DNA of 64,000 nt from Trichosphaerium sp. ATCC 40318 (lineage: Eukaryota > Protista > Tubulinea): positions 124,001 to 188,000 of the forward strand of contig JALMLS010000397.1 of assembly GCA_038496445.1 (NCBI GenBank), read 5' to 3'. The translations under genes and the position numbers were made by a program. The notes under the pieces are model-generated. The model did not search any database and was not told the DNA's origin. It was given only the letters and a program-made list of their open reading frames with translations. This document shows, in pieces, positions 19,142-44,523 of the stretch (the first letter of the stretch is position 1; every line of letters starts with the position of its first letter).

Positions 19142-20490
19142 TTAGTTTTGAACAGCCGGCTGTTCTACATTCAATACATTTTCTTTGAGTTCAGTTCCAT
19201 ATGATGTAGTTTGCTTTACAGGAACCATTGTAAAAACGATTGCAAGGATAAATCCTGCTTGAAGTAACCTCTGAACAACCTGGAAAATTACATCAATAAT
19301 CACATGCTCCTCAGTCTCTTCCGTATAAACTACCAACAGCATTGTATTCATCACTAGAACAAGTATAATAGCCACCGCGTATATAACACCAGACGAAATA
19401 AGGACCAAGAATATCTAAGTTTATAACACAAGATAAGAAATAGATAGATACAGACGACTCTGAAGTGAGAGAAATAAGTTACCTTGTACCGAAATGATTT
19501 GAATGTTTCTTTGCTCACTTTAAGAATTGTTCTTGTTCTAAACCCCATGTACAATAAGCCCGTTCCAGATATAATACCGAATACAATAATGTACGCAGCG
19601 TACACAGGACCGGAAACTTCACGAGCTCTAAGGTTTGTACTGACAACAATAGCATAATAGGCAAACTCTATAATCACAAGTACTACAACATATAGTTTAG
19701 CGAGGATAGAACTCTAAGTGTCGTCATTAAATTCCGTACTAGTAATTAATATCCACGAAGTGTGACTCACAAAAATCCTCATAAAAGGTCCTGGTCGTGG
19801 TTCAATCAATGCCCTTAACAGTTGTTACAAACAACATTTTTTGCACGTTGCATTAAACGCAGTACCATAGTCTAAGTAGAAGAATTACAATTGTAACCAA
19901 GCAAGCATATGTGATAGCGTCAACAAACATTACAAAGTGCCATGACAATTGTCTTGTGAATAGAGGATCAAACACGCAAAAAATAAATCCAGCTAAAGAA
20001 AGATTGTTAACTAACTTCACTTGAAAAAAAAACCAGAAATCCACTTTGTTTACCTGTACTACCGATAACGGATACAAGCCAAAGAAGTTTAACAGTGATG
20101 TTTTTATACTCATAAGGCGGTTTGTATATCTTGTAACGGATGATACAGTATCTAAACACAATTAACAATTAGGAGTCATTTACTTGCTTGTATTCGCGGC
20201 GTTACATTGTATAGAGCCAAAGAAGACCGAAACACAGCCCAAAGAAGATATTGAAAGCCAATACTGCAGAAACTACAAAAAAATCCTTAAAACTTGTTCA
20301 AAAATCACGTGATTACCACCAGCTTTTAATTCGCACCTAAAAAACCAACCTTGTATTATTTTTGGAATTTTTTTCGCATCGAAATAGCGTACCAATCTCC
20401 TGCACGCGATGCAAAGCATATACATTCTCCCTCCTGACATAAACCGCCTCCATGGCAATTATTTTCATAGCATGTCGTTTGATTCTCCAT
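19142..20490 (-). CDS. Orphan EGF-like + 7TM receptor, copy A (multi-exon)
   Basis: MENQTTCYENNCHGGGLCQEGECICFASRAGDW|C, then seven hydrophobic segments; exon-intron structure shared with paralogs. Confidence 0.75.
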
Positions 20491-20773
20491 CTGTTACAGT
20501 CCTTGTGTTAGAAGCAGTTCGTTCGTATAAAGAGTTAAGTTTCGGGTACTTATTTTCAAGAGTTGTGTTGAATGCTTATTCTCCGCTTAGGTATCTTTAT
20601 TAGTATGTCACAACTGTATGTTTTCGATTATTTAACTGTCAACTCGATTGGTGAGCTTCCACAATTAGGTAAAACACCTTTTTGAACAAATTTGAAATGC
20701 CAATTGCCACGTTGCTATGAGGCGATCTTGTACTTTTATAGCGGAATAGTATGTTTATTGTATACGATTTGAG

Positions 20774-21590
20774 TTACTTAGCAAGTACTGGCTTTGCTTT
20801 TGGTTGTTTGACTGGTGTCATTGTGATAATTATTGCAATGATAGATCCTGACTGTAATAGCTTTTGCACAGCTTGAAAAGCAACTTCAATAATCACATGC
20901 TCTTTTTTATCAGCACGATAGACACCTAAAAGCAAAGTTGGCATAACTAGAAGTAGAAGAGGAGCCACAATGTACAAAATACCAGACGATACTACAAGCA
21001 AGAAAATCTGAACAAAGTAAGACATTCGTTACAAAAAAAAAGGAGAAAAAAATGAGATACCTTAACCCCATGTACAACAAGCTTGTACCAGATACAATAA
21101 TGAATAAACTGAATACACAGAAGAGTGCAGCATATATGGAAAAGCCAACATCACGTGTTTGAAAGTTTGTACCAACAACAATAGCAAAATAACCAAACTC
21201 GCAAACAACCACAACTACAACAAGATTATTATTGAACTCTGGGCATTAAATCACATACTTGCCATTAATACCCAAGAAAGGTAGTTGATAAACATTCTCA
21301 TAAAATATCCAGGTCGAATGTTTTACGTAGAATTAAAAGCAGTACCACATTAGCTACAATGAACAGCTGTGAAATAGCCACTAAAACAATCCGAAAGTAG
21401 TACCAAAACAACTAATTACAGACACAAGCCACAGAAGTTTGATAATGATGTTTTTGTGCTCATAAGGTGGTTTGTATATCTTGTAACGCAAGATACAGTA
21501 TCTACTTAAATAATGGCCTACTTTGGACGCTTTGATGGTATTGTATCGTTTTACATCGAATAGAGCCCAAGCAGCCCAAAACATAGTTTG
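20774..21590 (-). pseudogene. EGF-7TM receptor copy B, 5'-truncated pseudogene
   Basis: Aligns to copy C but lacks the EGF exons and has internal deletions near 21063, 21318 and 21350. Confidence 0.75.
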
Positions 21591-21862
21591 CCATCTACAT
21601 CACAGCCACCGAATAAAAAAGGTTCACTAGACGAAGACGCTCTTGCAAAGTCAGTAGCTAAAGCAAACTAGTTTTCATACAGAATGTCATGCCAAGTTGC
21701 AAACAGGAGAGGCATACAAATGCCTCAAAAAGTCGGAGGTCGTTTGCAAAGACTTGACTCATTATCGCTCAGATAAGAAAATTCCTTGAGCTTGTCAAGC
21801 AGTTACTTGAAACATCTGCTGTAACTGGACGCGACCGTATTAAATCGACCGAAGTATCAAAA

Positions 21863-22120
21863 ATGTCCAAGTTTATGAATAAGGTGTTCAAGAAGAACAA
21901 AGACAGGGAAGAGTTGATTTGTGATACTCGCTCCGCTTATTCAATGGCTCTTGTAATGGATAACTGGTCCAAGTATGGTGCCTTGAATGAAGGAGACAAG
22001 CCTAACTACCATGATTTTACAAAAGACACCTATATGACGCCAATAACTACTCTTTTAAACTTAAGCCTTTTTTCTTTGAGTTTAACTGGAAAGCTATCGC
22101 CAGTTCTTTTGTCGAATTGA
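21863..22120 (+). other. Unidentified coding-like fragment adjoining the truncated end of copy B
   Basis: 85-aa ORF within about 500 bp of coding-like sequence; no recognisable domain. Confidence 0.2.
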
Positions 22121-22392
22121 TTTGTTCTATTGTATTAGGTAGAGACAATGTAGCTGCCTTAAAGAATGAGCAGTAATCTTGTGTTTACTGGCTTGCTCAT
22201 AGCAAGTTGGTTTAGCACAACATACTATGTGTACTCCTAGTTGTGTTTTGTATGCTTCAAGACCTGCTAGTTAACATGGTGAACTTTAATAGTTCCACAT
22301 TTAACCTTTTGAATAAATTTGGCCCCAATTGCCAGCTATGAGGCGGTCTTGTACTTTTAGCGGCACAGTATGTTTATTGTATACGATTTGGG

Positions 22393-23670
22393 TTACTTAG
22401 CAAGTACTGGCTTTGTCTTTGATTGTTTGATTGGTGTCATTGTGGTAATTATTGCAATGATAGATCCTGCCTGTAGTAGCTTTTGCACAGCTTGATAAAC
22501 AACTTCAACGATCACATGCTCTTTTGTATCTTCAGGATAGACACCTAAAAGCAAAATAGCCATAACCAGAGCAAGAATAAGTGCCATAATATACAAAATA
22601 GCTGCTGATACTACAAGCAAGAAAATCTGAAAAACGAAATGAGCACAAAAAAAAGGAGCAAATAATAAGTTACCTTGTATCGAAATGATTTAAATGTTTC
22701 TTTGTTCACTCTAAGAACCTTCCTTGTTCTAAACCCCATGTACAAAAAGCATGAACCAGATACAATAATGAATAAACTGAAAAATACAGCATATATGGAA
22801 AATGCAACATCACGTGCTTGAAGGTTTGTACCGACAACAAGACCATAATAACCAAGCTGGACAAAAAACAGAACTACAACAAGATTATTATTGAACTCTG
22901 GGCATTAAATCACATACTTGCCATGAATACCCAAGAAAGGTAGTTGATAAACATTCTCATAAAATATCCTGGTCGAGGTTCAATCAATGCCCTGAGTATT
23001 TGTCTTACAAACATGATTTTTGAAATACTCAGAAGCAGCAAATTGTTTTAAGAGCATTAAAAGCAGTACCACAGTCTAATTATCAGAATCACAATTGCAA
23101 ACACACAAAGATATGTCGCAACATCAAAGAAGAAACTCAATCTCCATGATAGGTGTCTTGTGTACAAAGGATCGAACACTGAAAAAAAGAATCCAGCTAC
23201 AATAAACAGCTGTGAATAGCGACCAGAAGCAATAAGACAGTAGTACCGAAACACCAAATAACAGACACAAGCCAAAGTAATTTAACAGTGATATTCTTAT
23301 GCTCATACGGTGGCTTGTATATTTTGTAACGCAAGATACAGTACCTAAACTAAAAGTATTGGAAAAAAAGATTAAACAACAGGTGAAAGCGTGGTACAGA
23401 GTATAGAGCCCAAGCAGTCCAAAGCACAGCCCAAAGACGATATTGAAAGCCAAAACAACAGGTTCTACAATAATATTGTTAACAGTGATCAAATATCACG
23501 TGATTACCGCTAGGTTTGAACTGGCACCTAAAGAACATTTTACCATTCGAAATAATCGACTTTGGTGCTTACCACTGCCCTGCGTGTGATTCAAAGCATA
23601 TACATTTACCTTTAACGCATATCCCGCCCCCATTACAATTATTATCAAAGCACGAAGTGGTATTCTCCAT
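22393..23670 (-). CDS. Orphan EGF-like + 7TM receptor, copy C
   Basis: MENTTSCFDNNCNGGGICVKGKCICFESHAGQW|CQF plus 7 TM segments; ends KPVLAK*. Confidence 0.75.
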
Positions 23671-23754
23671 TTTATAAGAAATGGAAGAATGACTTGACGG
23701 ATTGTACAAACGGCAAGACTTTTTTTTTGGAATTTTTTATTGCAATTAAATGCC

Positions 23755-23776
23755 ACTATGTAAGGCTAGTTTGTCA
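23755..23776. repeat. 22-bp direct repeat, left copy
   Basis: actatgtaaggctagtttgtca, identical at 26282-26303. Confidence 0.8.
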
Positions 23777-25017
23777 ACCTTAATTACCAACGAAAACAAG
23801 TAATTTAAACTATACAGAATAGTCCTCTTACCTTAGGTTTTATTTATCAACAAGACGCAAGGCATCTAAATATTGTGGAAATAGAAAGACCACCAAGTGA
23901 GTCAACATAAAGCGTACAACATGAGTATGGTAACTCTGACTATTCACGAAATCCATTTTTAGATTGTTGTCGAAACAAATCCAATAAATGCTCTTATTTG
24001 TTGTGTTATTGACTAATTGTTTTATAACAAATGCTTGTCGCAAAATGTCGCGATATTACGCGAAATCTCGTGAAATATCACGAATGCACTTTCGAATTTT
24101 GCCAAAAGTAGTGCTACCCATTCTTTTCCATTTCAACATAACGTTGGTACTTTTCAATTGCTGCTATTTTAGGCATGTCATGGAGTAATTTTATGGAAGA
24201 GGTTATACAGCAATTGTAGTATCACATCAACCTGTTGCATGATTGGCGATAGGACGCCTTAAAATACACTCCGAGAACTTTTAGACTAATGTTACCTCGC
24301 CTTGCAATACTGTAACTTAAACAATGTAAAGAGTATGAGTTCACCAATATTAATCAGTATTATGCACGGAATATGTTTAACAACCAGAGACGTTATGGGA
24401 AGGGATAATTCAAAAACTGCAAAATTTTCCGAATTTGCAGTACTGCAACCACCACTTTTTTTATTGCTCTAAAAGGATTGTACAGTCTCAAAAAGGGCTC
24501 AGAATTTACTAGTTGGAAACAAATTACAAAATTTAAAACGTAAATGACGCCATGTGATTTTTTCGAAAAAATATTGTTTTGCCATAACCCCCTATCTTCA
24601 ATATGAAAGAAACTGCCTAGATTGTTTTGTGAACCTAGCAACGAAAGTTCGGTTCCATTGTCTGGGAACTGTACAACCTTGTGCGGAAAATAAAAAACCC
24701 CGCTCTCCACAACATTGTAATTATTGGATGGATAGGTAAGGGCAGATCATTACCAAGCTACATAATTGAGACTTTTATACTCAACTTATTTTTATAAAAA
24801 TATCACGCTATCATGTGATAAAATATATAGATCAGTGCATCTAGATCCATAGATCTAACCTTTATAGGGACAAAGGCAATCCAAATTTTATATGAGTTGG
24901 GCCTCGTTATATAAATTTACCCTTTTGCCTGATGTGATTTAAACACACTAGCGCATGAGAAAGTTACTAGCAAATCATTATACTCAAGTTTTCAAACACT
25001 AAACAACAAGTGGAAAA

Positions 25018-26019
25018 ATGGTACGAAACAAATTTCCGCTGTTCTATCTCTTCATCTCACAGTATAACCAGAACTGGATTATTTTATTCGTTTGTGTGGC
25101 ACTCTTCCTGATGCAAGCTGCAGCGCTAGACACAAGCAAAACGCCTGGAGAAAACTTCGACCTCAGCAACTGGAAAATAACACTTCCTGATTCGTCAGCA
25201 AGCGAAAGATCACCTTCTCAAGTACGCAACTATTTTCCCACTTTCTAAGAATTTATGCCTGTGTAACATTGCTGTTAGCTGCGCACATACACTTCCAACT
25301 ACTTTTACACCGGAGGTGATGGATCGATGACGTTCTATTGTCCTTCGAATGGCGGTACAACAAGTGGATCAAGGTATCCAAGATCTGAGTTACGTCAACT
25401 CTGTAACCCTGATGACGATAACTACGTACACAACAGCAATGTTAAGCTAAAACTAACACTCTGCGTTCTTTTTTAGAATTGGCACATATCTGATAAAAAC
25501 GTGATGAAAGCAAGACTCAAAGTTGATAGAGCCAAAACGAATGCCAATAAAGTTATAGTACTTCAAATTCACGCTTTTGACGCCCCACCTCTTATCAAAA
25601 TTCAATGGGAATCTAACGGGAACATCTACGCTTTGTACAAGAAAAACAGAGACGGTGACGATGCTCCAAAGGTATGTATAATAGTTATAATTTGTCTCTA
25701 CCCTGGAAGTTAGAATTAACGCAAACTTGAGGTTACTCTGGGCAGTGTTGGATTTGGTCGTTTTGACATGGAAATACATGTACGTCCTCGACATCATGTA
25801 ACTTGTTTTGATGTTTACCAATAGGCTGACAACGGACGCCTTAAAGTGTACCTCAATGCTGCTAAAACACTGGACGTGGATGTGGGTGGGTATTGGAGCA
25901 GCTTCACAAACTACTTCAAGGCTGGTAGCTACTTGCAAGCAAACTCTGGTGATCAGTTCGCTACAGTCCGATTCTATGAATTGGATATCACCAGCCAAGG
26001 ACCTTGTGAAGAAGATTAA
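25018..26019 (+). CDS. Secreted polysaccharide lyase family 7 (alginate lyase), about 5 introns
   Basis: Signal peptide; PGENFDLSNWKITLP; GGTTSGSRYPRSELRQ; VIVLQIHA; NYFKAGSYLQ (the three conserved PL7 regions). Confidence 0.9.
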
Positions 26020-26281
26020 ATAAACTGCTCACACTTTCAATTCAAGTTGCCTACACCAAGTTTTAATACAGTTTTTGTTCACTAGTGATACATATCCTTT
26101 AAAAATGACACGTGGGCACCATGTGTTACCTTAACAAGTGAACGTAAAGACTTAGCTGAATCTTGAATAAGGCCATTAAATACAACGTCCACTATTTCCA
26201 AGTTAGAAACTGCAACGTTTGTCAGACTTAGAGGCTGGTCACATTATTATTCCCTTCCTGTTTGACATCTTCTTGGTGCAA

Positions 26282-26303
26282 ACTATGTAAGGCTAGTTTG
26301 TCA
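26282..26303. repeat. 22-bp direct repeat, right copy
   Basis: Identical to 23755-23776. Confidence 0.8.
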
Positions 26304-26326
26304 GTTCTGTCAAAGGTGTCAAAAAG

Positions 26327-26645
26327 TAACGCCCTTCCGTGAATAATTTGAATACAGCCTACATTCACGACTAAAAAAATTCATTCATGCACACAGTAAA
26401 CGGTCGAAAATTGCGCAATTTGATGGCTGATTTTGACTGGATTTGTGGGTTTTGGTGTTCTGTTGACTATTCCGATTCGGTTTTCAAATGCCATTTGTTG
26501 AATCTATCCATTTGGAACATCGCTAGGTGCTGCAAACCAAAAGCTCCTCAACATCCTGACTCACTAAATGCCAATGAATATTAATGAATATGGCTTACGG
26601 ACAATGAATGTGAATATTGCTTGTATTCATAACGGAAGGGCGTTA
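26327..26645. mobile_element. MITE with TA flanks, copy 1
   Basis: Perfect 14-bp inverted ends including the TA, taacgcccttccgt / acggaagggcgtta; internal tgaata repeats; no real ORF. Confidence 0.75.
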
Positions 26646-26820
26646 TCAAAAACTTGAAATATCTTTCAAAAAAACAGGATGATCGCAATAAAGTTTCCGG
26701 CATTTCGAGAGTTTTTCTTGTTTAGGTTTCCTATTTATTTATTACTATCTCACTACAATGTGTTTTCGGCTACTAGTGACTATGTTGAGCTTTTTTTTCT
26801 ACATCCACAACAGGTGTATG

Positions 26821-28142
26821 CTACAGTACATGGTGGCGAGTTTCTTGGACTTTTGTGGAAGCTTCAATAGTAGTTAACTTGGGTGCACTAACGGATTTGA
26901 CAACAGCTTTTGAACTTGATAGACTGACTGGTTTCATTGTACCAACTATTAGAACAATGGTTGCTGCATGAAGTAGCCTCTGCAGAGCTTGGAAAACAAC
27001 TTCAACGATCACATGCTCTTTTGTATCTTCAGGATAGACAAGTAAAAGCAAAACAGCCATAACCAGAGCAAGAAGGAGTGACACAATATTCATAATACCT
27101 GCCGATACTATAAGCAAGAAAATCTGAAAAAAGACGTGAGCTTCAAAAAAAAAAAGAATAAAATAAGATATACCTTGTATCGAAATGATTTGAATGTTTC
27201 TTTGTTGACTCGAAGCATCTTTCTTGTCCTAAACCCCATGTACAAAAAGATTGAACCAGATACAATAATGAACAAACTAAAGAATACAGCATATATGGAA
27301 AATGCAACATCACGTGCTTGAAGGTTTGTACCGACAACAAGACCATAATAACCAAACTCGACAAAAAACAGAACTACAACAAGATTATGTTTGGAACTCC
27401 GGGCATTAAATTACGCACTTGCCATGAATACCCAAGAAAGGTAGTTGATAAACATTCTCATAAAATATCCTGGTCGAGGTTCAATCAATGCCCTAGAGTA
27501 TTCGTTACAAGCAAATTGTTTTAAGAGCATTAAAAGCAGTACCACATTCTAATTATCAGAATCACAATTGCATACAAACAAGCATACGCGATAGAATCGA
27601 ATATGAAGCTCAATCTCCATGATAGTTGTCTCGTGTACAAAGGATCGAACACTGAAAACAAGAATCCCTCTACAATGAACAAATATAAACAGATGAAAAG
27701 CAATAAAGAAATAGTACCGAAACACCAAATAACAGACACAAGCCAAAGTAATTTAACAGTGATCTTTGTAAGCTCATATGGTGGCTTGTATATTTTGTAA
27801 CGGACAATACAATATCTACTCGAATATTAGCCTATTTTTGGATCGATTTGTTTGTCTTGACTTGTTTTACATTGTATACATCAAAAGCAACCCAAAACAC
27901 AGTCCAAATACGATATTAAATGCTAATACAACAGATGCTATAAAATACTTGTTAACAGCCGATAAAATACCACGTGAGTACCATCGGCTTTGAATTGGCA
28001 CCTAGACTAATTTAACTCCGAAATCGTCGACTTTTGGTGCGTACCACTGCCCGGAGCGCGATTCAAAGCATATACATTTATCTCTAACACATAGGCCACC
28101 TCCATTACAATTATTATCAAAGCACGAGGTGGTGTTTTCCAT
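26821..28142 (-). CDS. Orphan EGF-like + 7TM receptor, copy D
   Basis: MENTTSCFDNNCNGGGLCVRDKCICFESRSGQW plus 7 TM segments; same intron positions as paralogs. Confidence 0.75.
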
Positions 28143-28736: not shown

Positions 28737-30131
28737 TTACAGATCGACTGTATTCACTGTTCTCTCAGCAATACTTGGTGTTGCAACTGTGCTCATTGTT
28801 CCAGCAGAACTTGTTTTTTCAGTACCACATGATTTTGTTTGCTTGACAGGTATCATTGTGAAAATGATAGCAAGAATAAATCCTGCATGTAGTAGCCTCT
28901 GAATAACTTGGAAAATCACTTCAACAACCACTTGCTCTCTTTTATGTTTAGTATAAACTATTACCAACAAAAAGGTCATAACCATAACGAGAAGAAGACC
29001 AACAGTATATATAATACCTGTTGATACAAGAAGCAAGAATATCTAATCCAAAATTAAAAAAGTAAGCACGTACACGTGCACGGAAGTATGTCCATGACCC
29101 AAAAAAAAACAGAATAAGACGTGAGCTTCAAAAAAAAAAGAATAAAATGAGATACCTTGTATCGAAATGATTTGAATGTTTCTTTGTTTACTCGAAGAAT
29201 CTTCCTTGTCCTGAATCCCATGTAAAGTACACTTGTACCAGATACAATGCCAAACACAAAAAATATGGCAGCATAGGTAAGTGTAGCCTCATCACGTGCT
29301 TGAAGGTTTGTACCAACAACAAGACCATAATAACCAAACTCGAAAAAAAAAAGAACTACAACAACGTTATTGCACTATTGAGCACTGCTTTTTGTTCACA
29401 TCAAGTTTCGTACTTGCAATAAATATCCGTGAAAGGTAATTAATAAACATCCTCATAAAAGGTCCTGGTCGTGGTTCAATCAATGCCCTTAACAGTAATT
29501 ACAAACATTTTTCGAAGCGTCGGAAAGTTGCATTAAACGCAGTACCATAGTCTTAGTAGAAGAATCACATTGCAAACAAACAAGCATATGTGATAGCATC
29601 AAAAAAGAAGCTCAATCTCCATGATAGTTGTCTCGTGTACAAAGGATCGAACACTGAAAAAAAGAATCCAGCTAAAATGAACAGTTATGAAATTGTCACT
29701 AGAAGCAATAAGAAAGTAGTACCGAAGGAACCAATAACAGACGCAAGCCAAAGAAGTTTAACAGTGATATTCTTGTGCTCATATGGTGGCTTGTATATTT
29801 TGTAACGCAAGATACAGTACCTAAACTAAAAGTATTGGAAAAAAAGATTAAACAACAAGTGAAAGCGTGGTACAGCGTATAGATCCAAAGTAGTCCAAAA
29901 CACAGCCCAAAGACGATATTGAAAGCCAAAACAACAGGTTCTACAAAAATATTGTTAACAGTAATCAAATATCACTAGGTTTGAATTGGCACCTAAAGAA
30001 TACTTTACCATTCGAAATAATCGACTTGGTGCTTACCACTGCCCTGCGTGTGATTCAAAGCATATACATTTACCTTTAACACATATCCCGCCTCCATTAC
30101 AATTATCAAAGCACGACGTGGTGTTCTCCAT
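28737..30131 (-). pseudogene. EGF-7TM receptor copy E, mosaic; 1-bp deletion gives a premature stop
   Basis: GCA ATG TGA at about 29570 where paralogs have GCA ATT GTG ATT; otherwise full length (could be a sequencing error). Confidence 0.65.
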
Positions 30132-30387
30132 TATGAAAGACTAATTGTGACAGATGAGCTTGCCAAATTATCTACTTTTTTAGTTTTATCCACAATTAAC
30201 GGTGTACCAACCAAAACAAGTGGTTGTGATTAACATGGTAAAAAAACCTTGACCGTACTACAGGTAATCAAGAATTCATCTCATGTTTAAACATTGGGTC
30301 AACTTTTAACATAATTTATTGAGCTCTTTGCTAACAAATTTGTTGGGAATGTTGGTACAAACTGCGACATCATAACACGAGATGACA

Positions 30388-30855: not shown

Positions 30856-32346
30856 ATGTCTTCTCACTGCAGCAATTCATCCACTGACCAAGTGTCTTCA
30901 CATCAATCCGTCCCATTCCTCCCACCAGAGACTATATCAAACATCCTGAGGTTTTTAAACAAAAAACAGCGCATCAAGGCATCTACTGTTTGTCACATGT
31001 TCAACGACATTATCCGCTACATTGTCGGTCTTGATATAATTACAATCAACTCGTTCCACTGCAATGTTCTACAAGGCAGCCCATTACTGAAAAACACAAC
31101 AATCTCATTTGGTACTAAAGCGTCGTACACCTACAGAACCACTATATCAGAGGTTGAATTATCTTGTCTTTCTGGTGTTCATAGTCTTGATCTATCTCAT
31201 GGTTTGTTTAAAGATCAGGCTATCCTCTCTTTAGTACAAGGTGGACACAACATTCACAACATAAATCTGCGTACTACAGAAATTACAGACGTATCACTTC
31301 AAGCCCTTAAATCTGTTCACACTATTGATATTGTTGGATGTAAAAATGTTACAGTTGATGGCATAAAAGCACTAGCTGGCGTACATAAAATTAGCCTATC
31401 TGTGCAAAAAATATCATGGATCAAACATCTTTGTAGTGCGCATACTATTGAACTAGAGAGATCAAAAATGATTGAAGAAGATGAAGTCAACTTGACCTTA
31501 ACAAATCTCAGAAACCTCAGATTGTATCGCTGTAAGATGGCACTCACATTTACAAAACATTTAGTCACTCTTGAATATCTTACAATCATTAACAACAGTG
31601 TCTATAATATCACAGACTCGAGTTTGAAGCACTTGGTCAATCTTAAGCACCTTGAACTTTCTGATGCCAGCAGCATTGCAGATGCAAGTTTGAAACATTT
31701 GGTTAAGCTGGAGCACCTCTCACTTAAATCTTGTGTCTCTGAAATTGGACTGGCATTCAAGTACTTGGTTAATCTCAGACGCCTTAAACTTTCTGGCTGT
31801 TCAAAAAACTTGTACATTGAAGATGTAGCAACTATACTTGAGAAGCTTACACTCCACTGGTGCAAAGAGGATACAGACTTGGGTTTGAAGCATTTTGTTA
31901 ATCTGAAACACCTCGACATTGACCACAGTAATATTAAAGGATCAGCATTTCGGTACTTGAATAGTCTTACACACCTTACGCTTTCTGATTGTGACGCAAT
32001 TGTAAACTCGAACTTAAGCAAAACAACCAGTATTATTAGTCTCAAGATTTCTGATTGTCCAAGCATAACAGACGCAGGTTTAAAGAGCTTGGTTAATCTT
32101 GAGCGCCTTGAAATGTTCAGGATCTACAAAATAACAGACAAAGGCTTGAAGAACTTGGTTAATCTTGAGCATCTTGGACTCATATGCTGCGAGAGTTATG
32201 CTACGAAACTAAAGAATTCAATTACAAAAGGCTGTTTAAAATACTTGACATCTCTTGAGACTCTTGAACTTCGTGAATCTACTACGTTTACTAAGAAGTA
32301 TGTCGAGAGCCTGGGTATTACATTGATAGAGAAGCAGTATTATTAA
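30856..32346 (+). CDS. F-box/LRR-repeat protein (single exon)
   Basis: F-box LPPETISNILRFLNKKQRIKASTVCHMF; many LKHLVNLKHLxL..C..ITD LRRs. Confidence 0.9.
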   Translation: MSSHCSNSSTDQVSSHQSVPFLPPETISNILRFLNKKQRIKASTVCHMFNDIIRYIVGLDIITINSFHCNVLQGSPLLKNTTISFGTKASYTYRTTISEVELSCLSGVHSLDLSHGLFKDQAILSLVQGGHNIHNINLRTTEITDVSLQALKSVHTIDIVGCKNVTVDGIKALAGVHKISLSVQKISWIKHLCSAHTIELERSKMIEEDEVNLTLTNLRNLRLYRCKMALTFTKHLVTLEYLTIINNSVYNITDSSLKHLVNLKHLELSDASSIADASLKHLVKLEHLSLKSCVSEIGLAFKYLVNLRRLKLSGCSKNLYIEDVATILEKLTLHWCKEDTDLGLKHFVNLKHLDIDHSNIKGSAFRYLNSLTHLTLSDCDAIVNSNLSKTTSIISLKISDCPSITDAGLKSLVNLERLEMFRIYKITDKGLKNLVNLEHLGLICCESYATKLKNSITKGCLKYLTSLETLELRESTTFTKKYVESLGITLIEKQYY

Positions 32347-34869: not shown

Positions 34870-34953
34870 GAAGGAAACAAGCCAGCATCACCGAATAAAA
34901 AAATTAAGCTACTGTTTCAAAAAAAGTCAATACATAAGCGCTAACATTGCACC

Positions 34954-36673
34954 ATGCTCGCACTACGCATTGGTAGGACCCAATTAGCGCGAAATAGTGC
35001 CAAAAAACGACTTTGTCGTTATTCCTCCACGAATGATACGCCCAAAGGTAAAGGTGTATCTGCAAAAAGCAAAGCAGTCTATTCAAAAAGCAAGAGTGGA
35101 ACAGAATATGTCACACTACACCTTGATGGCTTCAGAAAGAGGAGGTTTAAAGCAAACGAACTCAAAACTGGCAGGGGAGAGAAAAACTCCAACCTCTTGG
35201 CTGCGGTTTTCCCATCCCGTAAGGAGGAGCAAGAAGGAGATGACGATTTCAAAGGAATAGACAGGATAGAGGAAGAAGAAGAACAAGAAGAACGACTCGT
35301 CGATGACGAGCCTCATGTACTAGAAGGGGAGACAGAAGTAACAGAAGATTCACTTCTAGACGAAATGGCTGCAGAACAGGATGCCGAGAATGACTACGAA
35401 CTTGATACACGCCTAGAAGATCTCCCAGAAGATACCCTGAGAGCGCTAGAGGAGTATGAATCAAAAATGACGTATAAATCACCAAACACTACAGAGATGG
35501 AACCACGCGAAAAGGCTAAAGTACATAAGGTAGAAAAGGCTTCTCAGCTTAATTTCTACCGTTTGGCGATGTACGACGATTTGCGCAAGAATGCTGATAG
35601 AATGGGTAATTACCCAATTACATCCGCGAAAGCGCGTCGAAAAGCTTGGGAGCTCCACTGCCTTGATCCAGGTACCGTCTAACTTAAAATTATACAAAAT
35701 AGCTTTAAAACGCGCTCGCTCACCTGATTGTATTCTTTTTATCGTTAAAACCGCGCTCTCGCTCTACTTTATTTTAAATACGCTTTACTAACGCTTTCCA
35801 TCAGAATACTGGACAATGAAGCGCTTATCTGCTGTATTTAAAGTGCGTGCCGATGAAATGAAGTTTTACATGTATGTCAAAGCAACTGCAATGAAAGGTA
35901 CAGCTTTTTTTCGTTTGTTTTTTTTTTGTTATTGTAGTTGAGTACCTCAACTAATTTCTTTTTTTTCTTCTTTAGCACGTAAGCTTGGTCCTCAATATGT
36001 GAATGCTGGTAAAGATGATCGTATTGAACAGCTCTTGGGTAAAGAGTTTGGTGAACTAGACTTTCCAGACACCATCATGACGCCTGGAAAAGATGACCCA
36101 CCTAAGGTGGATAATATTGCTTATTATCATTTGGATGATAATGTTCGCTCTCAACGATTAAAGCAGATGGTTTCTTCAATGTCCAAGAAGTACCGTGAAG
36201 CGCCTAAATATGCTAGACAGTTTATTCCTAAACCTCGAGCACTTGAAGCAATCTTACCTTCGAGAGCAAGAGAAAATATCTACAAAAACAAAAAATTGGC
36301 TAAATTCATCATGTGGGATATTTCGCCTTCCCGCGATTTATATAACCGAAAAGTTCTTGTCAGAGAGACTGACGGTTCTTGGAGAACAGGTGATTGGGAT
36401 GAAAGACGCTTCACACATGAAGCAAGACGCTACATGCGCTGGCGACTACGTGTACCAATCCACATTCCAGACGATGAACAAGAATCTAAAGTTCATCCTG
36501 ATGAACAAGTACCAGAAGGTTACAAGCCTAGTATGCCAAACCCTGAAAAATGGTACCCTGAAGATGCTACAAAACAGCTACAAGCCATGGGATCCAAGAA
36601 AGGACATTGGGGTCTTAAAGGCTTTAGTACTTTCAAGGAAGTTGTTGGTCAATATAAAGTCCGCTACGATTAA
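34954..36673 (+). CDS. Probable mitochondrial small-subunit ribosomal protein (mS45/mS22-like)
   Basis: Basic presequence; WELHCLDP|EYWTMKRLSAVF helix-turn motif; FIMWDIS...KVLVRETDGSWRTGDWDERR resembles the mS22/mS45 VVREPxGxLRxAxWEER motif. Confidence 0.55.
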
Positions 36674-36924
36674 ATGTACAATAAAACTTGATAGCAGACG
36701 CTCTCTAATTATGGTGTCATACCTTTCTTTCTCCTTATATATATGATAAAAAAAAAGATAAGCAAATACACTATGAACGTATGGTTGTCAATAAGCAAAG
36801 TGACACTTGACATGCGAAAAAAGAAGATTTTTGTCGACTTAATTGTTTTTGTTGAAGAATTTGCTCTGAAAATGTAAGTGTCAACACCGTTTTGGTATTG
36901 GCAATACGCGAAGGGCCCTTTTGT

Positions 36925-39900
36925 ATGTTCCTCTACTCCTTAACGCTACAAAAGCCCACTGCGATAAGTGATAGTATCTTTGGCCACTTTTCACGAGGTG
37001 ATGCTAATGAAATAGTGACGAATATTGGTACAGCTGTTGGTATTCTGCGTTTAGAAGAAGGTAAAATCGTAAAAGTCGCACAGAACGATTTATTCGCCAA
37101 TGCGCATTCTATCGCGTTACTACGCCGTGAAGGTACGCCATAGGTGACTATTACACAAGTTAAAACAACTTCAGAGATGGGTGTCGATGAAATAGCCGTT
37201 GGTAGCGACTCTGGCAAGATAGTATTCCTGCGGTTTAATTCTCACCACAATGTTTTTGAAAAAACACTTGAAACGCCCTTTTTGGGTTTACCGGGCTGCA
37301 GAAGAGATGTACCAGGTACTGAAGGCGTAAAATACGTTCAAAACACTCAATAAAGGCGGTTCACTAAAAGAACCCGCCACGTTAAATATCAAGTTAACTA
37401 TTAACTAACGCTCAGGACACTACATTGCTGTCGATCCTAGAAATCAAGCCATCATGTCAGCTGCTCTAGAATCAAATCTAACAGCATTTTACATTCCTTC
37501 AATCAATCAAGCACCTGAGCCACCAGCTACACTCAACAAACCGAATACTATTATTTTTGGGCTTATTGGACTGGATGCAGGATACGAGGGGCCTATGTTT
37601 GCTACTTTAGAACTAAACGTGGATTCGCAGTCTCAAACGTCGCAAAAGAGTGTAGTATATTACAAGGTAGATCATGGACCGGTTATACGACAGATTGGTG
37701 CCTTACCAGCGCCAAGAAGTGCAAACAAAATTATACCTTACTTGGGCGGTGTTTTAATCTGCACGGAAGAAAACTTGATTGTTTTCCAGCAAAGAGATCA
37801 AGATCCTATTTCGGCTGAAATGCCAAGAAGAAGGAATAATAATGGTCCTTGTTATCTGATTGTTTCTTACTATACGTCTATCAATACCCAGTATGCCGTT
37901 ATACAGAATGAACTTGGAGATATATTCGTTGTACAGTTGGACGCGGTACGCGGAAAGACTTTTTGACATTTTTTTTTTTCGTGTTTTTTTCTGACAATTG
38001 GAAGTTTTTTTTTTTGTTGGATTTTTCCTCACGTGTGTAATTACTTTTGATGTTTGTCTTTTATACAAGTGAAAGTACTTTGGTTAGTGTATTTTTTAGT
38101 AGTGGAAAAATTTATTTTGTTGAAATTAATAATGGTTTATGTCGACCTTTCTTTTTTTTTTTGACATTCGATTTTTTCTAATTTGACTTGTCAAGTACTT
38201 CTAATTTCTCTTTTTAGGGTAGCCTTAATGTTCATTATGTTGAAACAGTTACTGTTGCTAGCACTCTTCTTGTTGTTGATGAGCAGTACCTATTTGTAGG
38301 TTCAGAATTTGGTGATGAGTACGTGTTAGCAAAGCAACTATTATTCACCCAAAACATTGTGAAAGTTCGCTGCCAGTTTTAAGTTTATCCACATTCTAAC
38401 ACTAAATTAGTGATTGGTATAAAGTTACATCGTTTGGAGACACTGGGATGTTTGTAGATACCTATACCCCAACACCTTCAGGCAAACTTCTTCAACATAT
38501 TGAAAAAATAGCAAATGTCAATCCTATCGGCGACATGAAGGTTAGTTAGATATCATGTTTATGTTGTACGTCTCAAGTGTATCCTCACTGTGTTTTGTTA
38601 GGTATTAAATGTTCTTAATGCTGTTACACCTCAAGTATATTGCTTGTGTGGCACTGGTAGTAGATCTTCTCTTCGCATGCTGTGGCATGGTATGCCTGTT
38701 CAAGAAAAGCTATCAATGAAATTACCTGATCAATTAACAACTGGTGAACCGACCGGATTGTGGACCGTAAAGCTCGATAATGCAGGTACAATCTTGATTT
38801 ATACACCTTTGCCTCTTGCACTTTGTGATCTTGATTCAAAGTAACTGGTTCTCGTTAGATCCATTTCAAAAACACATTGTAATCTCGACACCTCAAAGTG
38901 TTGCCATGATAGTAGTTGGCTCTGATGGTAATATCCATCCTGTAGCAAACAGTGGGTTGGTAAACCAAAGAACCTTTCACGTGTCAAGGTGGGGTACTGA
39001 TTCGTTAATCCAAGTACGCTTAAACTCATTGCTTCGTTGTTTAATTTTGTTTTTCAATCAAGGTTCACTTGACTGGCATTGCTATTATATTGAATGGTAT
39101 GACCGTTGATCGATGGAATGTGCCACCACCAGATAGACGAGTTACTTTAGCAGCTGCAACGCCTACTCAAGTGATAATTGCAATGAACAAAGGTAAGGCT
39201 AAATCTCCAAAGTTGCATTTACTTAACCTATGTTTTATAGGCGAGATTGTTTACTTTGAACGCTCTCCAACAACTGGGAAACTGGATGAAAAAATCAGAT
39301 ACAGATTAGGTGCCGAAATACGTGCTCTTGATATAGGTCCTCCAGACCCAACAACCCTAAAGTACGTGAGCTTAGTGAAGATTTTACTAATTACTTGTAA
39401 TAACAGGTCTCAGTATTTGACTATTGCTGACAGCAGTGATTGTGTTCGTATTTACGTTATAATGGATGGCAATATGCACGCAATGTCACAAATGGTTGTG
39501 AAGAATCCAACGAGTTCTGTATTACTAGCAAACACCGCAAAAGGACTTTCATTGATTGTTGGAATGAAAAATGGATTTTTAATTAGATCTAAAGTTGATG
39601 AAACTACTGGAAAGATTCTTAGTATGAGTACAAAGTACGTTAATTATTTATGCATAATTAGCTTCTAATATGATTTAGGTACTTGGGAAATAGAGCTGTT
39701 CATTTGTATAAGGCTTCTATAAAAGGAAAGAGTACAATTCTTGCTTTGTCTAATCGTACTTGGGTTATTACTGATTATTTTGAGAGAAACCTCATTGTAC
39801 GTTTTTTGGTTCGAAGACTACACCAAAAATTCTAGCAGTTTACTCATCAAATACTCTGAAACCTCCATGACCGGTGTGAAAATTAGTTTTGCTTTGTTGT

Positions 39901-42377
39901 GTTGTGACACGTGCAATCCGGATTTTTTTCGCTTTTTTTTTCGCTTGGTTATTATTTGCACTTACAGTTATTAGACGCCGCTATCTTATCGTGTCGCTGT
40001 TTTTGTATGTCCTTATTCTTCACAATTCTGTCGTGAAGGTATAGTAGCTATATTAACTCCAACAAGCGGTGGACAGTCTCAATTTAGGTACACCAAAGTT
40101 TGACTGTTTTTTTTTGGTTCAATTTGTTCCCAGTTTTGCTTGTTATTTGCAATTGGATTATGCTGTTAGTAACTGTTCTTATTATTATAGGATATTTCAG
40201 TGGATCCCTGATAAGTTAGAACAGACTTTCAGTCAGACGAGTGAAGTTTTATCTTATACTCCACAGGCTTTTATTGTTCACCCTTTTACGAACAATAACT
40301 TGCTTACAATTGAGAGTGATCCTGTTCCAAATAGGCGTACTGGATTAGATATACATGGTGTACGTATAAAGAACACAAAACCAACTACTATTACCAATTA
40401 CGTGCACACATTGAGGTGTCACTATTAACACTTACAATGAAACAACCATATTGTGGCTACTGTTTTAACACTTGTTTAGACTGATGTCGCGCCAAGATGG
40501 ACGTCATGTTTGCGAATGCTCCAAGTGACTAGCAATAGCAACACAACAATCACCACCGAGTCCTATCCAGCGAATGAAGCAGCGGTCAGGTAAAACTAGC
40601 CTAACCTTTGATTCTTTTTCTCGTTTACCTACTTTTGTTTTAACAACACTTGTTTTGTTATAAGCTGTACCAGGGAGGTGTTAATGTTTTTATTCTAGTC
40701 TATGCAGCTGTACATTTAAAAACCTAAAGGGAGAGACCTATGTTTGTGTTGGTACTGCTGTTAACTACGACTCTATACAAAAGGTACTTCTGTTGTTTTT
40801 TTTCGTCACTTTATTTTCATCTTCGATGTGTTTTACTAATACTCTCAAGTCCGCTGAGAAGGGATATATCTATACATACCAACTTGTGAATTCAAGGAAG
40901 AAATTCCAACTTGTTCATAGAACAACACTTAATGGTGCACCAGGTGCAATGACTTCTATTCATGGACTTTTATTGGTTGGTGTTGGAAATGTTTTGGGTG
41001 TTTATGATCACAGGAAGAATGGTTTAGTTCTTAAAGCTGATTGTAAAAGTATATCGTGGCCTATTGTATCTCTTAGTGTTTCTGCTGATGGCCCAACTGC
41101 AACAAGACAACGTATTGTTGTTGCTGACTCTTCAGAGTCTTTTCATTTCTTGGAATATAAACGACATAATAATGCTTTTACTATTCTTGCTGAAGATCAA
41201 GTACCAAGGCACGTGTGTTTGTTAATTTTCTTTATTTAATAGTACTTTAAAACGTTTAAATGCTTACGTTTTTTCTAGGTCTATTACTGCTGCTGTATTG
41301 CTTGACTGTGAAACAATTGCTGGAGGTAACTTTTTACACTTGTATTTTTTCATTGAAGTTCTTTTTTCATGTATACTTTTTTCTGCTTCACTGTACATAT
41401 TCTTTCTGGTGTTTAACTAAGCTTAAATATCCTTGGAGTTATCCTCAAAAACAAATCTCGGGTTTGCATGCAAACACGATTACAAGTGATTAATGTTGTT
41501 TTTTTTATTTGGTTTTATTTAGTGACTCAACTTGTTTTTGACAGGTGACAAGTTTGGTAATATTTTTATAATGCGATTGCCTGAAGACTTTGATGAACAG
41601 AGTAAAGGGAAGAAATTACCTTTGGAGAGTTGGAGTCTGACGTACAACAACAGAGCTTCGGCAAAGGTAAAACTACAAATATAATTTGTTAAAAGCTCTT
41701 TCTCACTTGTTTTGTATTAGCTTGAAACCCTTTGTAATTATCATGTTGGCGACTATATAACGTGCATGGTTAAATGTAATCTAGCACCAGGTACAGTTAT
41801 TTCTGAGAAAAACACTTTGAAATGAAGCACAAAGTGTGCAAACATAAGTGTTTGCTTTTTGGATCAAGTTGATGATTTTTGTGCGTTGATTACTTAGTTC
41901 ACTTTTTTAGGCACAAAAGAGATTATACTATATTCTACAATGACAGGTATCATTGGTGCACTCTTACCAATAACAGATAAAGAAAGTGTCGATTTATTTG
42001 TAAAGTTGGAGTTTTTAATGAAACAAGAATATAAACCACTTTGTGGTAAAAGTCATCATGACTTTAGATCGTCATACTCCTTGTCAAAAGTACGACTTTT
42101 TTTATCATACCATTTCTTTAAAATCTATATTTTCACATAAACCCCACGTGCTTTTTAAGCGGTGAGTGTTGCTGTGGTGGCGCTTTCTGTCGAAACCAAA
42201 AAAAACCCCCAAAATTCGATCTGACATGATTTTTAGAATGTTATTGATGGTGACTTGTGTGAGCGGTTTTATCAGCTTAGTGATGCCGGTCAAGCTGATG
42301 TTGTAAAGAAACTTAAACTTGAGAGTATTGCACTCATGTATCAAAAGATTGAAGCACTAAGAAGTTTGTGTTTGTAA
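36925..42377 (+). CDS. SF3B3: SF3B3/Rse1-like splicing-factor subunit (DDB1/CPSF-A family), divergent, many introns
   Basis: MFLYSLTLQKPTAI; VGSDSGKI; GCRRDVPG; CGTGSRSSLRML; GDKFGN; LCGKSHHDFRSSY; NVIDGDLCERF. Confidence 0.85.
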
Positions 42378-42753
42378 AAAAAAAAACAGAAAAAAAAAGA
42401 ATAAAAAAGTTGACCAAGTATTGACGTCTAGTTGCTCGCAAACGTTTTAATACTTATCAATTTTAGTGCTTGATAAGTTTAAAAACATAAACATAATTGA
42501 TTAAAGGCGCTGCACATAGCTAGGCTACACAATGAGTTCAAATAATTATAGCTAACACGAAACCTTAAATTCTCATCAATTATACATGTTGGCCTAGGCA
42601 CTTGCTGCAGCTCATGTAATCTGTTTATTATAGTAAATAAGTTACTAGAGAAGGTATCAAAGCTACTATTCCTAGACATTTAAATCCGTGAAAATGTGTC
42701 ACATTTTTTCATCAAAATTCCATATTTGCTTTGAAAACTTAAACCAAAGCAGC

Positions 42754-44523
42754 ATGGAAAACATAACAAGCACGTGCTTTGAGAATACTTGTAATGGAGG
42801 CGGTAAATGCCTCGACGAAGGAGAATGTATATGCTTTAACTCACGTTCAGGAGAATGGTACCCACAACAGGTCGTTTATTAATAAATCCGTTCCCGTAGG
42901 TGTCAATTCAAAGCAGCTGGTAATCACGTGGTTATATTGAACTATTTTTAACGTGTTTTGGTAGCTTCTACAGTGTTGGTGTTCAATATAGTTTTTGGGC
43001 TGTGTTTTGGAGCGTTGTGGATCTATACAATGTACGAAAAAGCCATATACGAGCGTAGAAGACTGTATTTGTTAATTTATTTGGTAGATACTGTATCATT
43101 CGTTTTAAAATATATAAACCACCTTATGGTTATAAGGTCATCACTGTCAAACTTCTATGGCTTCTATCTATCATTGGCAGCACGGGTAAAATAAAACAAC
43201 GCACATGTCACGTGCAGTTTTTTTTCAATGTAAAAATGACTTGAAGACGACTGTGGGGTTTATCCTTTTGTAGAATTTTGTGCCCACTGTTCGTTTTTCT
43301 GACCTGTATTTCTTGTAGATGTTTAGATATCTACACAAACTAGATAATTCACCAAGTATCTACATAGATATTACAGTTCTATTCGTTCAAGTCCTACTGT
43401 TGTTCCCCACATGTCGAAACTGCTCATTTTATAAGCGAAATGAAACGTAAGGCCATTCTGTGGGTGGGGAAAAAAAAAAAGTAGGATTTGAATAGAACTG
43501 TATACAACGTTTTCAAAACTTCCATATTTTCCCTTATTTTCAATTATCTAGATATTTCGCAACTAGATAATTCATTATCTAGATATCATCTCGTGGACAA
43601 AAAACGTGATATTTTGTTTGAGTTCTTCGTTTTTTAATAACTCTGATGTAGCCGGATTTATTTTTTCGGTGTTCGATCCCTTGAATACTAGAAACTTGTC
43701 CTGGCAGTTTGTTATGTTCATTGATGCAAATACATACGCTTGCTTGTTCGTAATCATCATTCTTCTTCTTAGACTATGGTACAAATCTAAACTCTTCCTC
43801 TGTTGAAACTGTTGTTAATGGAAGTTCAGGGCGTTGATTGAACCAAGACCAGGGACCTTCATGAAGTTCTTTGTTAGTCACCTTTCTTGGATATTAATTG
43901 GAAGTACGTAATTCTGTGAACAGAGGAGTCTGGTGTAATATTTGTTGTCAGTCTTACACTTTGTAGTACTTGTTAGCATAGAGTTTGGTTATTTTGCTCT
44001 TGTTCTCGGTTCAGGCTTTAGAGCACGATATGTTGGTGGTCTTTTATATGCTATATTCTTTGCTACAGTAGGTATTGTATCTGGTGCTAGTCTACTTTAC
44101 ATGGGGTTCAGAACAAGAAAGATTCTTCGCATAAACAAAGAAACATTCAAATCATTTCGATACAAGGTATCTTATTTTTTTCTGCTTTTTTTTTCTGTTC
44201 ACGTGCCTTACTTGGATTAGATATTTTTGCTTCTTATATCAGAAGGTGTTATATTTACTTCTGGCCTTCTTCTTCTTTTTATCATGACTGCTTTGCTTGA
44301 ATTTGTGTTTACACAGGAAATGGAAGAGCATGTGACGATTGAAGTGATATATCAAGTAATTCAGAGGGTACTTCAAACAGGATTTATTCTTGCTATCGTT
44401 TTCACAATGACACCAGTGAAAAAAACAAAGTCAAGTGGTACTGAAACAAGTACCGAAGGAACAATGAACACATTTGCAACACCAAGTATTGCTGAGAGAA
44501 CAGTGAATACAGTCGACCTGTAA
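42754..44523 (+). CDS. Orphan EGF-like + 7TM receptor, copy F (inverted, outside the tandem array)
   Basis: MENITSTCFENTCNGGGKCLDEGECICFNSRSGEW plus 7 TM segments; ends ATPSIAERTVNTVDL* like copy E. Confidence 0.75.

What the first reader, a model, noticed from the sequence alone, without database searches (positions are those of the whole stretch)
19142..44523. Expanded orphan receptor family: one signal-peptide-less EGF domain on a 7TM bundle (six copies)
Seen: five tandem minus-strand copies (19.1-30.1 kb) and one inverted copy (42.7-44.5 kb). Five of the six start MEN[QTI]T (an N-glycosylation sequon), then a single 6-Cys EGF-like module of about 30 aa and seven hydrophobic segments; copy B has lost the EGF exons. 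Predicted intracellular loops are near-invariant (YKIYKPPYxHK, ALIEPRPG, GFRTRKILRxxKETFKSFRYK), while TM5-7, the extracellular loops and the tails vary. Known: animal EGF-TM7 adhesion GPCRs have signal peptides and GAIN domains, and neither is visible here. Inference: a lineage-specific GPCR-like family (possibly GPR137/TOM1-like fold) with a conserved effector face and a diversifying ligand face, e.g. for prey, kin or pathogen recognition.
Basis: partly seen in the sequence, partly recalled or inferred. Interest (0 to 1): 0.8.

Follow-up and report, generated by a model that had tools for sequence, protein, structure and literature searches.

The report
Orphan EGF-capped seven-helix membrane protein family
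A microbial eukaryote carries six clustered genes (four intact, two decayed) for small seven-helix membrane proteins, each capped by one EGF-like module; no relatives were found in public databases, and at least two copies are transcribed and spliced.

Summary
Six paralogs lie at the stated places: five tandem on the minus strand and one on the plus strand.

What I added:
- **Gene structure.** Each gene has 8 exons and 7 tiny GT-AG introns (42-78 nt; one of 466 nt). A 20-nt micro-exon supplies the sixth EGF cysteine.
- **Protein.** The products are 305-330 aa: a 40-aa N-terminus without signal peptide, holding one tenascin/teneurin-type EGF-like module, then seven hydrophobic helices. The positive-inside rule puts the EGF module outside.
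- **State of the copies.** A, C, D and F are intact. B is a deletion-ridden remnant. E is a gene-conversion mosaic with a frameshift and a lost splice donor.
- **Expression.** An MMETSP transcript ORF equals copy D exons 6-8. Contigs of a second public run show spliced D and A transcripts.
- **Selection.** It is purifying throughout (dN/dS 0.2-0.36). The cytosolic loops are the most constrained. The outer face shows no positive selection, so "diversifying ligand face" is not supported.
- **Relatives.** An exon-7 profile run against 1.84 billion representative proteins found only the gene's own transcript; a metagenome scan, a viral-contig scan and a C-terminal-half profile against PDB found nothing.
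- **Family.** Language-model features of three separate pieces point weakly to THH1/TOM1/TOM3-GPR137 receptor-like folds. Pfam and fold searches could not confirm this.

The full-length spliced protein had no reference, so it was neither folded nor searched.

The parts
19142..20490 (-). Copy A, intact, 318 aa. Exons 20490-20393, 20336-20317 (micro-exon), 20272-20206, 20151-20054, 19992-19866, 19813-19740, 19682-19483, 19414-19142.
   Evidence: Spliced model with GT-AG introns of 44-68 nt. A contig of run X1 joins exons 1-3 with exactly 100 nt removed, equal to introns 1 plus 2; its loose ends map to 20427 and 20179.
20777..21586 (-). Copy B, pseudogene remnant. It has no EGF exons and only a TM1 remnant. 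Exon 4 is intact. Exon 5 (TM3) is almost wholly deleted. Exon 6 is cut at its 5' end (ALIEP lost). Exon 7 is cut at its 3' end (the ICL3 motif is lost). Exon 8 is intact.
   Evidence: DNA alignment of the six copies and mapping of the remnants.
22393..23670 (-). Copy C, intact, 305 aa. Exons 23670-23573, 23527-23508, 23464-23398, 23344-23247, 23196-23070, 22991-22918, 22873-22674, 22626-22393.
   Evidence: Spliced model; 80% identical to D.
26821..28142 (-). Copy D, intact, 328 aa. Exons 28142-28045, 28001-27982, 27937-27871, 27815-27718, 27669-27543, 27492-27419, 27373-27174, 27123-26821.
   Evidence: Spliced model. P0001, an MMETSP transcript ORF of 179 aa, equals part of exon 6 through exon 8 at 100%. 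An X1 contig with no mismatches shows introns 5 and 6 removed.
27982..28001 (-). The 20-nt micro-exon 2 of copy D, encoding (W)CQFKAD. It supplies the sixth EGF cysteine. Equivalent micro-exons: 20336-20317 (A), 23527-23508 (C), 29992-29976 (E, 17 nt), 42900-42919 (F).
   Evidence: This is the only GT-AG solution that keeps the frame in all five copies. It completes the pattern C-x-C-x5-G-x2-C.
27374..27422 (-). Alternative GC-AG version of D intron 6. Its donor lies 4 nt upstream of the productive GT donor at 27418 and gives a frame-shifted isoform.
   Evidence: Joint 27373/23 to 27423 in an X1 contig. The productive junction is the one seen in P0001.
28737..30131 (-). Copy E, probable pseudogene and mosaic. 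A 1-nt deletion in exon 5 (within 29579-29563) brings a stop after 127 aa. An 8-nt deletion removes the donor of intron 2 (within 29983-29966). A 3-nt in-frame deletion lies in exon 1.
   Evidence: The window-by-window identity is mosaic: the 5' third matches C (91-98%), 29564-29514 matches A (97%), and the 3' end matches F (83-98%).
42754..44523 (+). Copy F, intact, 330 aa, inverted relative to the array. Exons 42754-42857, 42900-42919, 42965-43031, 43088-43185, 43652-43778, 43830-43903, 43967-44166, 44221-44523. Intron 4 is 466 nt.
   Evidence: Spliced model.

Best explanation
This is a lineage-restricted, tandemly amplified family of small (305-330 aa) seven-helix membrane proteins. The N-terminus has no signal peptide. 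It carries a conserved N-glycosylation sequon at residue 3 and one tenascin/teneurin-type EGF-like module that abuts TM1. TM1 is inferred to act as a reverse signal anchor, so the 40-aa EGF cap faces the outside or a lumen. The short loops holding YKIYKPPY (ICL1), ALIEPRPG (ICL2) and the basic stretch GFRTRKxLRxNKETFKSFRYK (ICL3, formed by helical extensions of TM5 and TM6) then face the cytosol. The most likely working model is a receptor or sensor. The EGF cap and the short outer loops would contact a partner or ligand, and the near-invariant cytosolic face would engage one common intracellular partner, a G protein or another effector. The fold is probably GPCR-like, nearest to the THH1/TOM1/TOM3-GPR137 group. 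Shown here: gene structures, copy states, transcription and splicing of A and D, purifying selection, and absence of detectable homologs. Inferred: topology, receptor function, effector coupling and fold family.
For: Six paralogs with a shared 8-exon structure. Seven hydrophobic segments. K/R counts of 12-13 on inner loops against 3-4 on outer loops in all four intact copies. The cysteine spacing is C-x4-C-x5-C-x4-C-x-C-x8-C, and EGF_TEN, EGF and EGF_2 are the top Pfam hits (E 2e-4 to 5e-3). In-frame stops lie upstream of the starts. Transcripts: P0001 from MMETSP equals D exons 6-8, and run X1 holds spliced D and A contigs. Whole-gene dN/dS is 0.22-0.36, with the lowest dN in the cytosolic loops. 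The six invariant motifs examined (four cytosolic-loop motifs plus one each in TM2 and at the TM2/ECL1 border) hold 25 variable nucleotide sites, all synonymous. AlphaFold2 secondary structure of P0001 gives four long helices, with TM5 and TM6 extended through ICL3. Language-model features of three separate pieces (D TM4-7, D TM2-3, F TM6-7) each give THH1/TOM1/TOM3 or GPR137 as the best named family, with other GPCR-like 7TM families following.
Against: No Pfam 7TM family matches any piece. The EGF hits stay below Pfam's gathering scores. The atlas scores (0.76-0.91) are lead-level only. The AlphaFold2 models of the C-terminal half are poor (pLDDT 56-58), and the Foldseek search on the first of them was meaningless. 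No ligand, G-protein link or localisation is known. The full-length protein could not be folded or searched. The outer face shows no diversifying selection, which one might expect of a recognition receptor.
Confidence: 0.55

Rival explanations
1. The proteins are endomembrane (lysosome, phagosome or vacuole) seven-helix scaffolds of the THH1/TOM1/TOM3-GPR137 type, with the EGF cap in the lumen. They would organise small GTPases or nutrient signalling on organelle membranes rather than sense ligands at the cell surface.
For: THH1/TOM1/TOM3 and GPR137 are the best named families by language-model features for three separate pieces. The size is similarly compact (about 300 aa, short loops). GPR137 is lysosomal (PMC12716839), and TOM1 co-purifies with the small GTPase ARL8 (PMC3234234, abstract).
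Against: HMMER finds no match to PF06454 or PF27607 in any piece. GPR137 carries no domain outside the 7TM (PMC12716839). Those families are usually low in copy number, not tandem arrays (my own knowledge). There are no localisation data.
Confidence: 0.25
2. The proteins are not signalling receptors. They would be structural, adhesive or transport membrane proteins in which the EGF-like cap serves cell-surface or matrix contact, and the conserved basic loops serve trafficking or lipid binding.
For: No family assignment could be made. EGF-like modules commonly mediate adhesion (general knowledge). No G-protein link was found in the window.
Against: All named language-model neighbours are GPCR-like 7TM families. 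TM5 and TM6 extend as helices around a basic ICL3, as in receptors. One invariant cytosolic face across paralogs that are otherwise only 56-67% identical (A or F against C or D; C and D themselves are 80% identical) suggests a shared protein partner.
Confidence: 0.15
3. The cluster is a decaying, non-functional gene family, and the transcripts are noise.
For: Two of six copies are broken. The X1 contigs show a retained intron in A and a frame-shifting alternative donor in D.
Against: dN/dS is 0.22-0.36 over whole genes. The invariant motifs differ only synonymously. Four reading frames stay intact across 8 exons, including a micro-exon. A productive spliced transcript ORF exists.
Confidence: 0.04

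Closest known systems
THH1/TOM1/TOM3 (PF06454) and GPR137 (PF27607) seven-helix proteins
   Same: Compact seven-helix proteins of about 300 aa with short loops. They are the best named neighbours by protein-language-model features for three separate pieces of the family.
   Different: No HMMER-level similarity. GPR137 has no domain outside the 7TM (PMC12716839), whereas this family has an N-terminal EGF-like cap. This family is a tandem array restricted to one organism.
Animal EGF-TM7 adhesion GPCRs (ADGRE/EMR/CD97, ADGRL4)
   Same: An EGF-like module on the outer side of a seven-helix bundle.
   Different: Those have a signal peptide, several EGF repeats, a GAIN/GPS autoproteolysis domain and a 7tm_2 bundle (general knowledge). 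Here there is no signal peptide, a single EGF abuts TM1 (40 aa in all), there is no room for GAIN, and no 7tm_2 match.
Remi-sans-famille (RSF) GPCRs of choanoflagellates and other eukaryotes (PMC12716839)
   Same: An orphan seven-helix family with only a weak structural link to THH1/TOM1/TOM3. A polar, Q-rich segment lies before or within TM7; here it reads [FY]Q-x-x-Q-[RK]-[LV]-L.
   Different: [quoted passage not shown] That motif is absent here, and only a loose resemblance was seen by eye. No sequences were available for a direct comparison.
Tenascin/teneurin-type EGF repeats
   Same: Cysteine spacing C-x4-C-x5-C-x4-C-x-C-x8-C with an NGG-G-x-C core. EGF_TEN, EGF_Tenascin and EGF_Teneurin are among the best Pfam hits.
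   Different: A single module at the extreme N-terminus without a signal peptide, and scores below the gathering cut-offs.

Membership tests
EGF-like domain | Six cysteines in EGF spacing and the pattern C-x-C-x5-G-x2-C (PROSITE EGF_1, recalled from my own knowledge) | tested here: met
   Read directly in the spliced models of A, C, D, E and F once the micro-exon is included.
EGF-like domain | Pfam EGF-type model above its gathering score | tested here: not met
   The best scores are 17.6-21.6 bits, against cut-offs of 21.5 (EGF), 22.1 (EGF_2) and 65 (EGF_TEN). EGF families are nonetheless the top hits, at E 2e-4 to 5e-3.
Adhesion GPCR (EGF-TM7) | N-terminal signal peptide | tested here: not met
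   The N-terminus is hydrophilic (MENxT...), and in-frame stops lie 2-27 codons upstream of the start in all five copies.
Adhesion GPCR (EGF-TM7) | GAIN/GPS domain before TM1 | tested here: not met
   Only 40 residues precede TM1, and the EGF module fills them.
Adhesion GPCR (EGF-TM7) | 7tm_2 (PF00002) transmembrane domain | tested here: not met
   No piece matches PF00002 at E up to 10. Only pieces were tested, not the full length.
THH1/TOM1/TOM3-GPR137 | Match to PF06454 or PF27607 | tested here: not met
   No match for any of 14 pieces or for P0001 at E up to 10. The full-length protein could not be submitted.
THH1/TOM1/TOM3-GPR137 | Fold-level similarity of the seven-helix bundle | tested here: inconclusive
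   Language-model features favour this family for three pieces (scores 0.76-0.91). The AlphaFold2 half-models have pLDDT 56-58, and Foldseek gave only noise.
RSF GPCRs | [quoted passage not shown] | tested here: not met
   The motif is absent. Only [FY]QxxQ[RK][LV]L is seen at the start of TM7 (alignment; motif from PMC12716839).
G-protein-coupled receptor in the functional sense | Seven helices with the N-terminus outside | tested here: met
   Hydropathy gives 7 segments. K/R counts are 12-13 on inner loops and 3-4 on outer loops in A, C, D and F. This is a prediction, not an experiment.
G-protein-coupled receptor in the functional sense | Coupling to a heterotrimeric G protein | not testable with these tools
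   No data.

The most novel reading that the evidence does not exclude
This is a previously undescribed class of GPCR-fold receptor. A single, signal-peptide-less EGF module sits directly on TM1 and acts as the ligand-binding or tethered element. The architecture would have arisen independently of animal adhesion GPCRs, and so far it is confined to one protist lineage, where it expands by tandem duplication and gene conversion.
Probability: 0.3. Interest if true: 0.65.

Novelty: new variant of a known kind. Interest (0 to 1): 0.5.

Why it matters
If the receptor reading is right, an EGF module was joined to a seven-helix bundle a second time, outside animals and without the signal peptide and GAIN machinery that animal EGF-TM7 receptors use. 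If the THH1/TOM1/GPR137 link holds, this would be, as far as I found, the first member of that poorly understood group with an ectodomain, which could give a handle on what such proteins sense. The family is also a compact example of an 8-exon gene with a 20-nt micro-exon kept intact through duplication, gene conversion and decay. It remains one orphan family in one organism with no functional data, so its general weight is moderate.

Tried and rejected
1. Treating D's exon 4 to exon 5 stretch as one exon. Rejected: all copies share a GT..AG intron there, which removes the apparent frameshift in C and the stop in E.
2. A 57-nt intron 1 in D giving '...GQC/RWYSRG'. Rejected in favour of the micro-exon, the only solution conserved in five copies.
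3. A single 100-nt intron in A (20392-20293). It also fits the RNA contig length and stays open, but its acceptor is absent in C, E and F and gives a stop in D (and my reading of the alignment).
4. The look-up of encoding contigs for P0001: nothing on record.
5. A search with the 98-aa N-terminal piece: no hits in its length window.
6. A profile of the C-terminal half (A5) against the 5.8-billion collection and against PDB: only the gene itself, or noise.
7. Metagenome and viral contig scans: nothing.
8. Alignments A2-A4 of exon fragments were misaligned by MAFFT. A5, with anchor rows, is clean.
9. AlphaFold2 of P0001 with A4 and with A5: pLDDT 58 and 56. Foldseek against Swiss-Prot models gave noise.
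10. Repeat search in F's 466-nt intron 4: nothing telling.
11. Left out: folding, Pfam/HHpred or topology prediction on the full-length spliced proteins.
Full report
**What is there.** A tblastn search with my spliced model of copy D finds the same six copies and no further fragment in the 64 kb. Five copies lie head to tail on the minus strand: A 20490-19142, B about 21586-20777, C 23670-22393, D 28142-26821 and E 30131-28737. One lies on the plus strand: F 42754-44523.

**Gene structure.** A DNA alignment of the six copies, together with enumeration of GT..AG junctions, gives a shared structure of 8 exons.
- The introns are 42-78 nt long. The exceptions are F intron 4 (466 nt), E intron 7 (113 nt) and E's putative 35-nt intron 2.
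- Two points differ from a plain ORF reading. First, a 48-61-nt intron splits TM2 in every copy. In D it happens to be open and in frame; in C and E it explains an apparent frameshift and a stop.
- Second, exon 1 ends in '...G-x-W'. A 20-nt micro-exon then encodes (W)C[QE][FL]K.. and supplies the sixth cysteine.
- This is the only solution with canonical splice sites and an open frame in all five EGF-bearing copies.
- It completes the spacing C-x4-C-x5-C-x4-C-x-C-x8-C and the pattern C-x-C-x5-G-x2-C.

**The protein.** A, C, D and F encode 318, 305, 328 and 330 aa.
- The first 40 residues hold a conserved N-x-T sequon at Asn3 and the EGF-like module.
- All five starts have an in-frame stop upstream (2, 24, 7, 4 and 27 codons for A, C, D, E and F), and the N-terminus is hydrophilic. 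There is therefore no signal peptide.
- EGF-type models are the top Pfam hits for the 40-aa cap (EGF_TEN, EGF, EGF_2, EGF_Tenascin; E 2e-4 to 5e-3), but they fall below the gathering scores.
- Hydropathy gives seven segments.
- With the EGF module outside, the loops predicted to be cytosolic hold 12-13 K/R and the outer loops 3-4, in each of the four intact copies. An N-out, C-in topology is thus the favoured prediction.
- AlphaFold2 secondary structure of the C-terminal half shows four long helices. TM5 and TM6 run on through the basic ICL3.

**State of the copies.**
- B has no EGF exons and only a remnant of TM1. It has lost nearly all of exon 5 (TM3), the 5' end of exon 6 and the 3' end of exon 7 with the ICL3 motif. 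It is a pseudogene.
- E has a 1-nt deletion in exon 5 that stops the frame after 127 aa. An 8-nt deletion removes the donor of intron 2, and a 3-nt in-frame deletion lies in exon 1.
- E is also a mosaic.
- E's frameshift could still be an assembly error. No DNA reads were available to check it.

**Expression.**
- A profile of exon 7 (A1) was run against 1.84 billion representative proteins. It found one true hit, P0001 (179 aa, E 2.5e-35).
- P0001 equals copy D from the middle of exon 6 to the stop. Its source label is an MMETSP transcript ORF. This confirms junctions 6/7 and 7/8 from RNA. MMETSP is, to my knowledge, the Marine Microbial Eukaryote Transcriptome Sequencing Project.
- One public run (X1) holds three short contigs.
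- The first contig matches D without a mismatch and skips intron 5 exactly as modelled. It skips intron 6 from a GC donor 4 nt upstream of the productive GT donor, which gives a frame-shifted isoform.
- The second contig has loose ends that map to copy A. It joins A's exons 1 to 3 with exactly 100 nt missing, the sum of introns 1 (56 nt) and 2 (44 nt), and it retains intron 3. A single 100-nt intron would fit that length too, but it is not conserved in the other copies.
- The third contig is 95.8% identical to D's last exon, so it comes from a copy or allele outside the window.
- At least A and D are therefore transcribed and spliced.

**Selection** (Nei-Gojobori estimates on the spliced models).

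| Region | dN/dS or other measure |
|---|---|
| Whole gene | 0.22-0.36 |
| EGF cap | 0.09-0.26 |
| Outer loops | 0.13-0.29 |
| Cytosolic loops | 0.14-0.25, with the lowest dN (0.07-0.15) and 78-92% identity |
| TM5-7 | 0.23-0.68 |
| C-terminal tail | about 1 |

- dS is near saturation for the A/F against C/D pairs.
- The six invariant motifs examined (KIYKPPY, ALIEPRPG, LYMGFRTR and KETFKSFRYK on the cytosolic loops, VKLLWL in TM2, VFDPL at the TM2/ECL1 border) contain 25 variable nucleotide sites, all synonymous. Their constancy therefore reflects selection on the protein, not only recent conversion.
Nothing indicates diversifying selection on the outer face.

**Relatives.**
- Apart from P0001, the exhaustive exon-7 profile search returned only repeat-protein noise.
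- Searches with P0001, with the 98-aa TM2-TM3 piece and with a clean profile of the C-terminal half (A5) found nothing else within their length windows.
- JGI metagenome contigs, IMG/VR and PDB gave nothing.
- No Pfam 7TM family matches any of 14 pieces.
- By sequence the family is an orphan. The caveats: the exhaustive profile covered only 66 positions, and the organism's full-length proteins are not in the collections.

**Fold family.**
- Protein-language-model look-ups of three separate pieces each give THH1/TOM1/TOM3 (PF06454) or GPR137 (PF27607) as the best named family. The pieces were D TM4-7, D TM2-3 and F TM6-7 with its tail.
- For the third piece, the further named hits are other GPCR-like bundles: GOST_TM, GPR180/TMEM145, Tmemb_40, Gpa2_C and 7tm_2. 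Scores range from 0.76 to 0.91.
- By the tool's own calibration these are leads, but they agree with one another.
- A recent survey states that GPR137 has no domain outside its 7TM. It also describes another orphan family (RSF) with a weak structural link to THH1/TOM1/TOM3 (PMC12716839). The RSF motif NxLQxxMNxL is not present here.
- AlphaFold2 models of the C-terminal half were poor (pLDDT 56-58). Foldseek on the first returned noise.
- The full-length spliced proteins could not be submitted, because they have no reference. The decisive fold and HHpred tests are still to be done.

**Verdict.**
- Supported: this is a real, expressed, lineage-restricted seven-helix family with an EGF-like cap and a conserved cytosolic face.
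- Not supported: only four of the six copies are intact, and the outer face is not diversifying.
- Open: the receptor function and the GPR137/TOM1-like fold remain inferences.
- Earlier scan notes on this genome list many other unusual 7TM fusions. I did not check them. If they hold, this family is one of several receptor-like expansions in this organism.

Noticed in passing
window 27374-27422 (-): In run X1, D intron 6 is spliced from a GC donor (GCAAGT) 4 nt upstream of the GT donor used in the MMETSP ORF. The result is a frame-shifted isoform.
   Followed up: partly
window 26914-27125: An X1 contig is 95.8% identical to D's last exon and only 87.6% identical to C. It therefore comes from a D-like paralog or allele that is not in this window.
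   Followed up: partly
window 43186-43651 (+): Intron 4 of copy F is 466 nt, against 48-61 nt in the other copies. The repeat search showed only short direct and palindromic repeats and no clear transposon ends.
   Followed up: partly
I did not check this.
   Followed up: no
window 30856-32346 (+): A single-exon 496-aa F-box plus leucine-rich-repeat protein lies just upstream of copy E (Pfam F-box, LRR_8, LRR_4).
   Followed up: partly
window 48217-48792 (-) and 56049-56693 (-): Two ORFs with MORN_2 repeat variants (Pfam E 3e-9 and 6e-18).
   Followed up: partly
window 37454-39668 (+): Exons of a gene with RSE1/DDB1/CPSF1-type beta-propellers (first and second propeller domains by Pfam).
   Followed up: partly
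window 9392-10171 (-): An ORF with a PH domain followed by a FYVE zinc finger.
   Followed up: partly
window 51060-52955 (+): A 631-aa ORF without any Pfam match. I did not check this.
   Followed up: no
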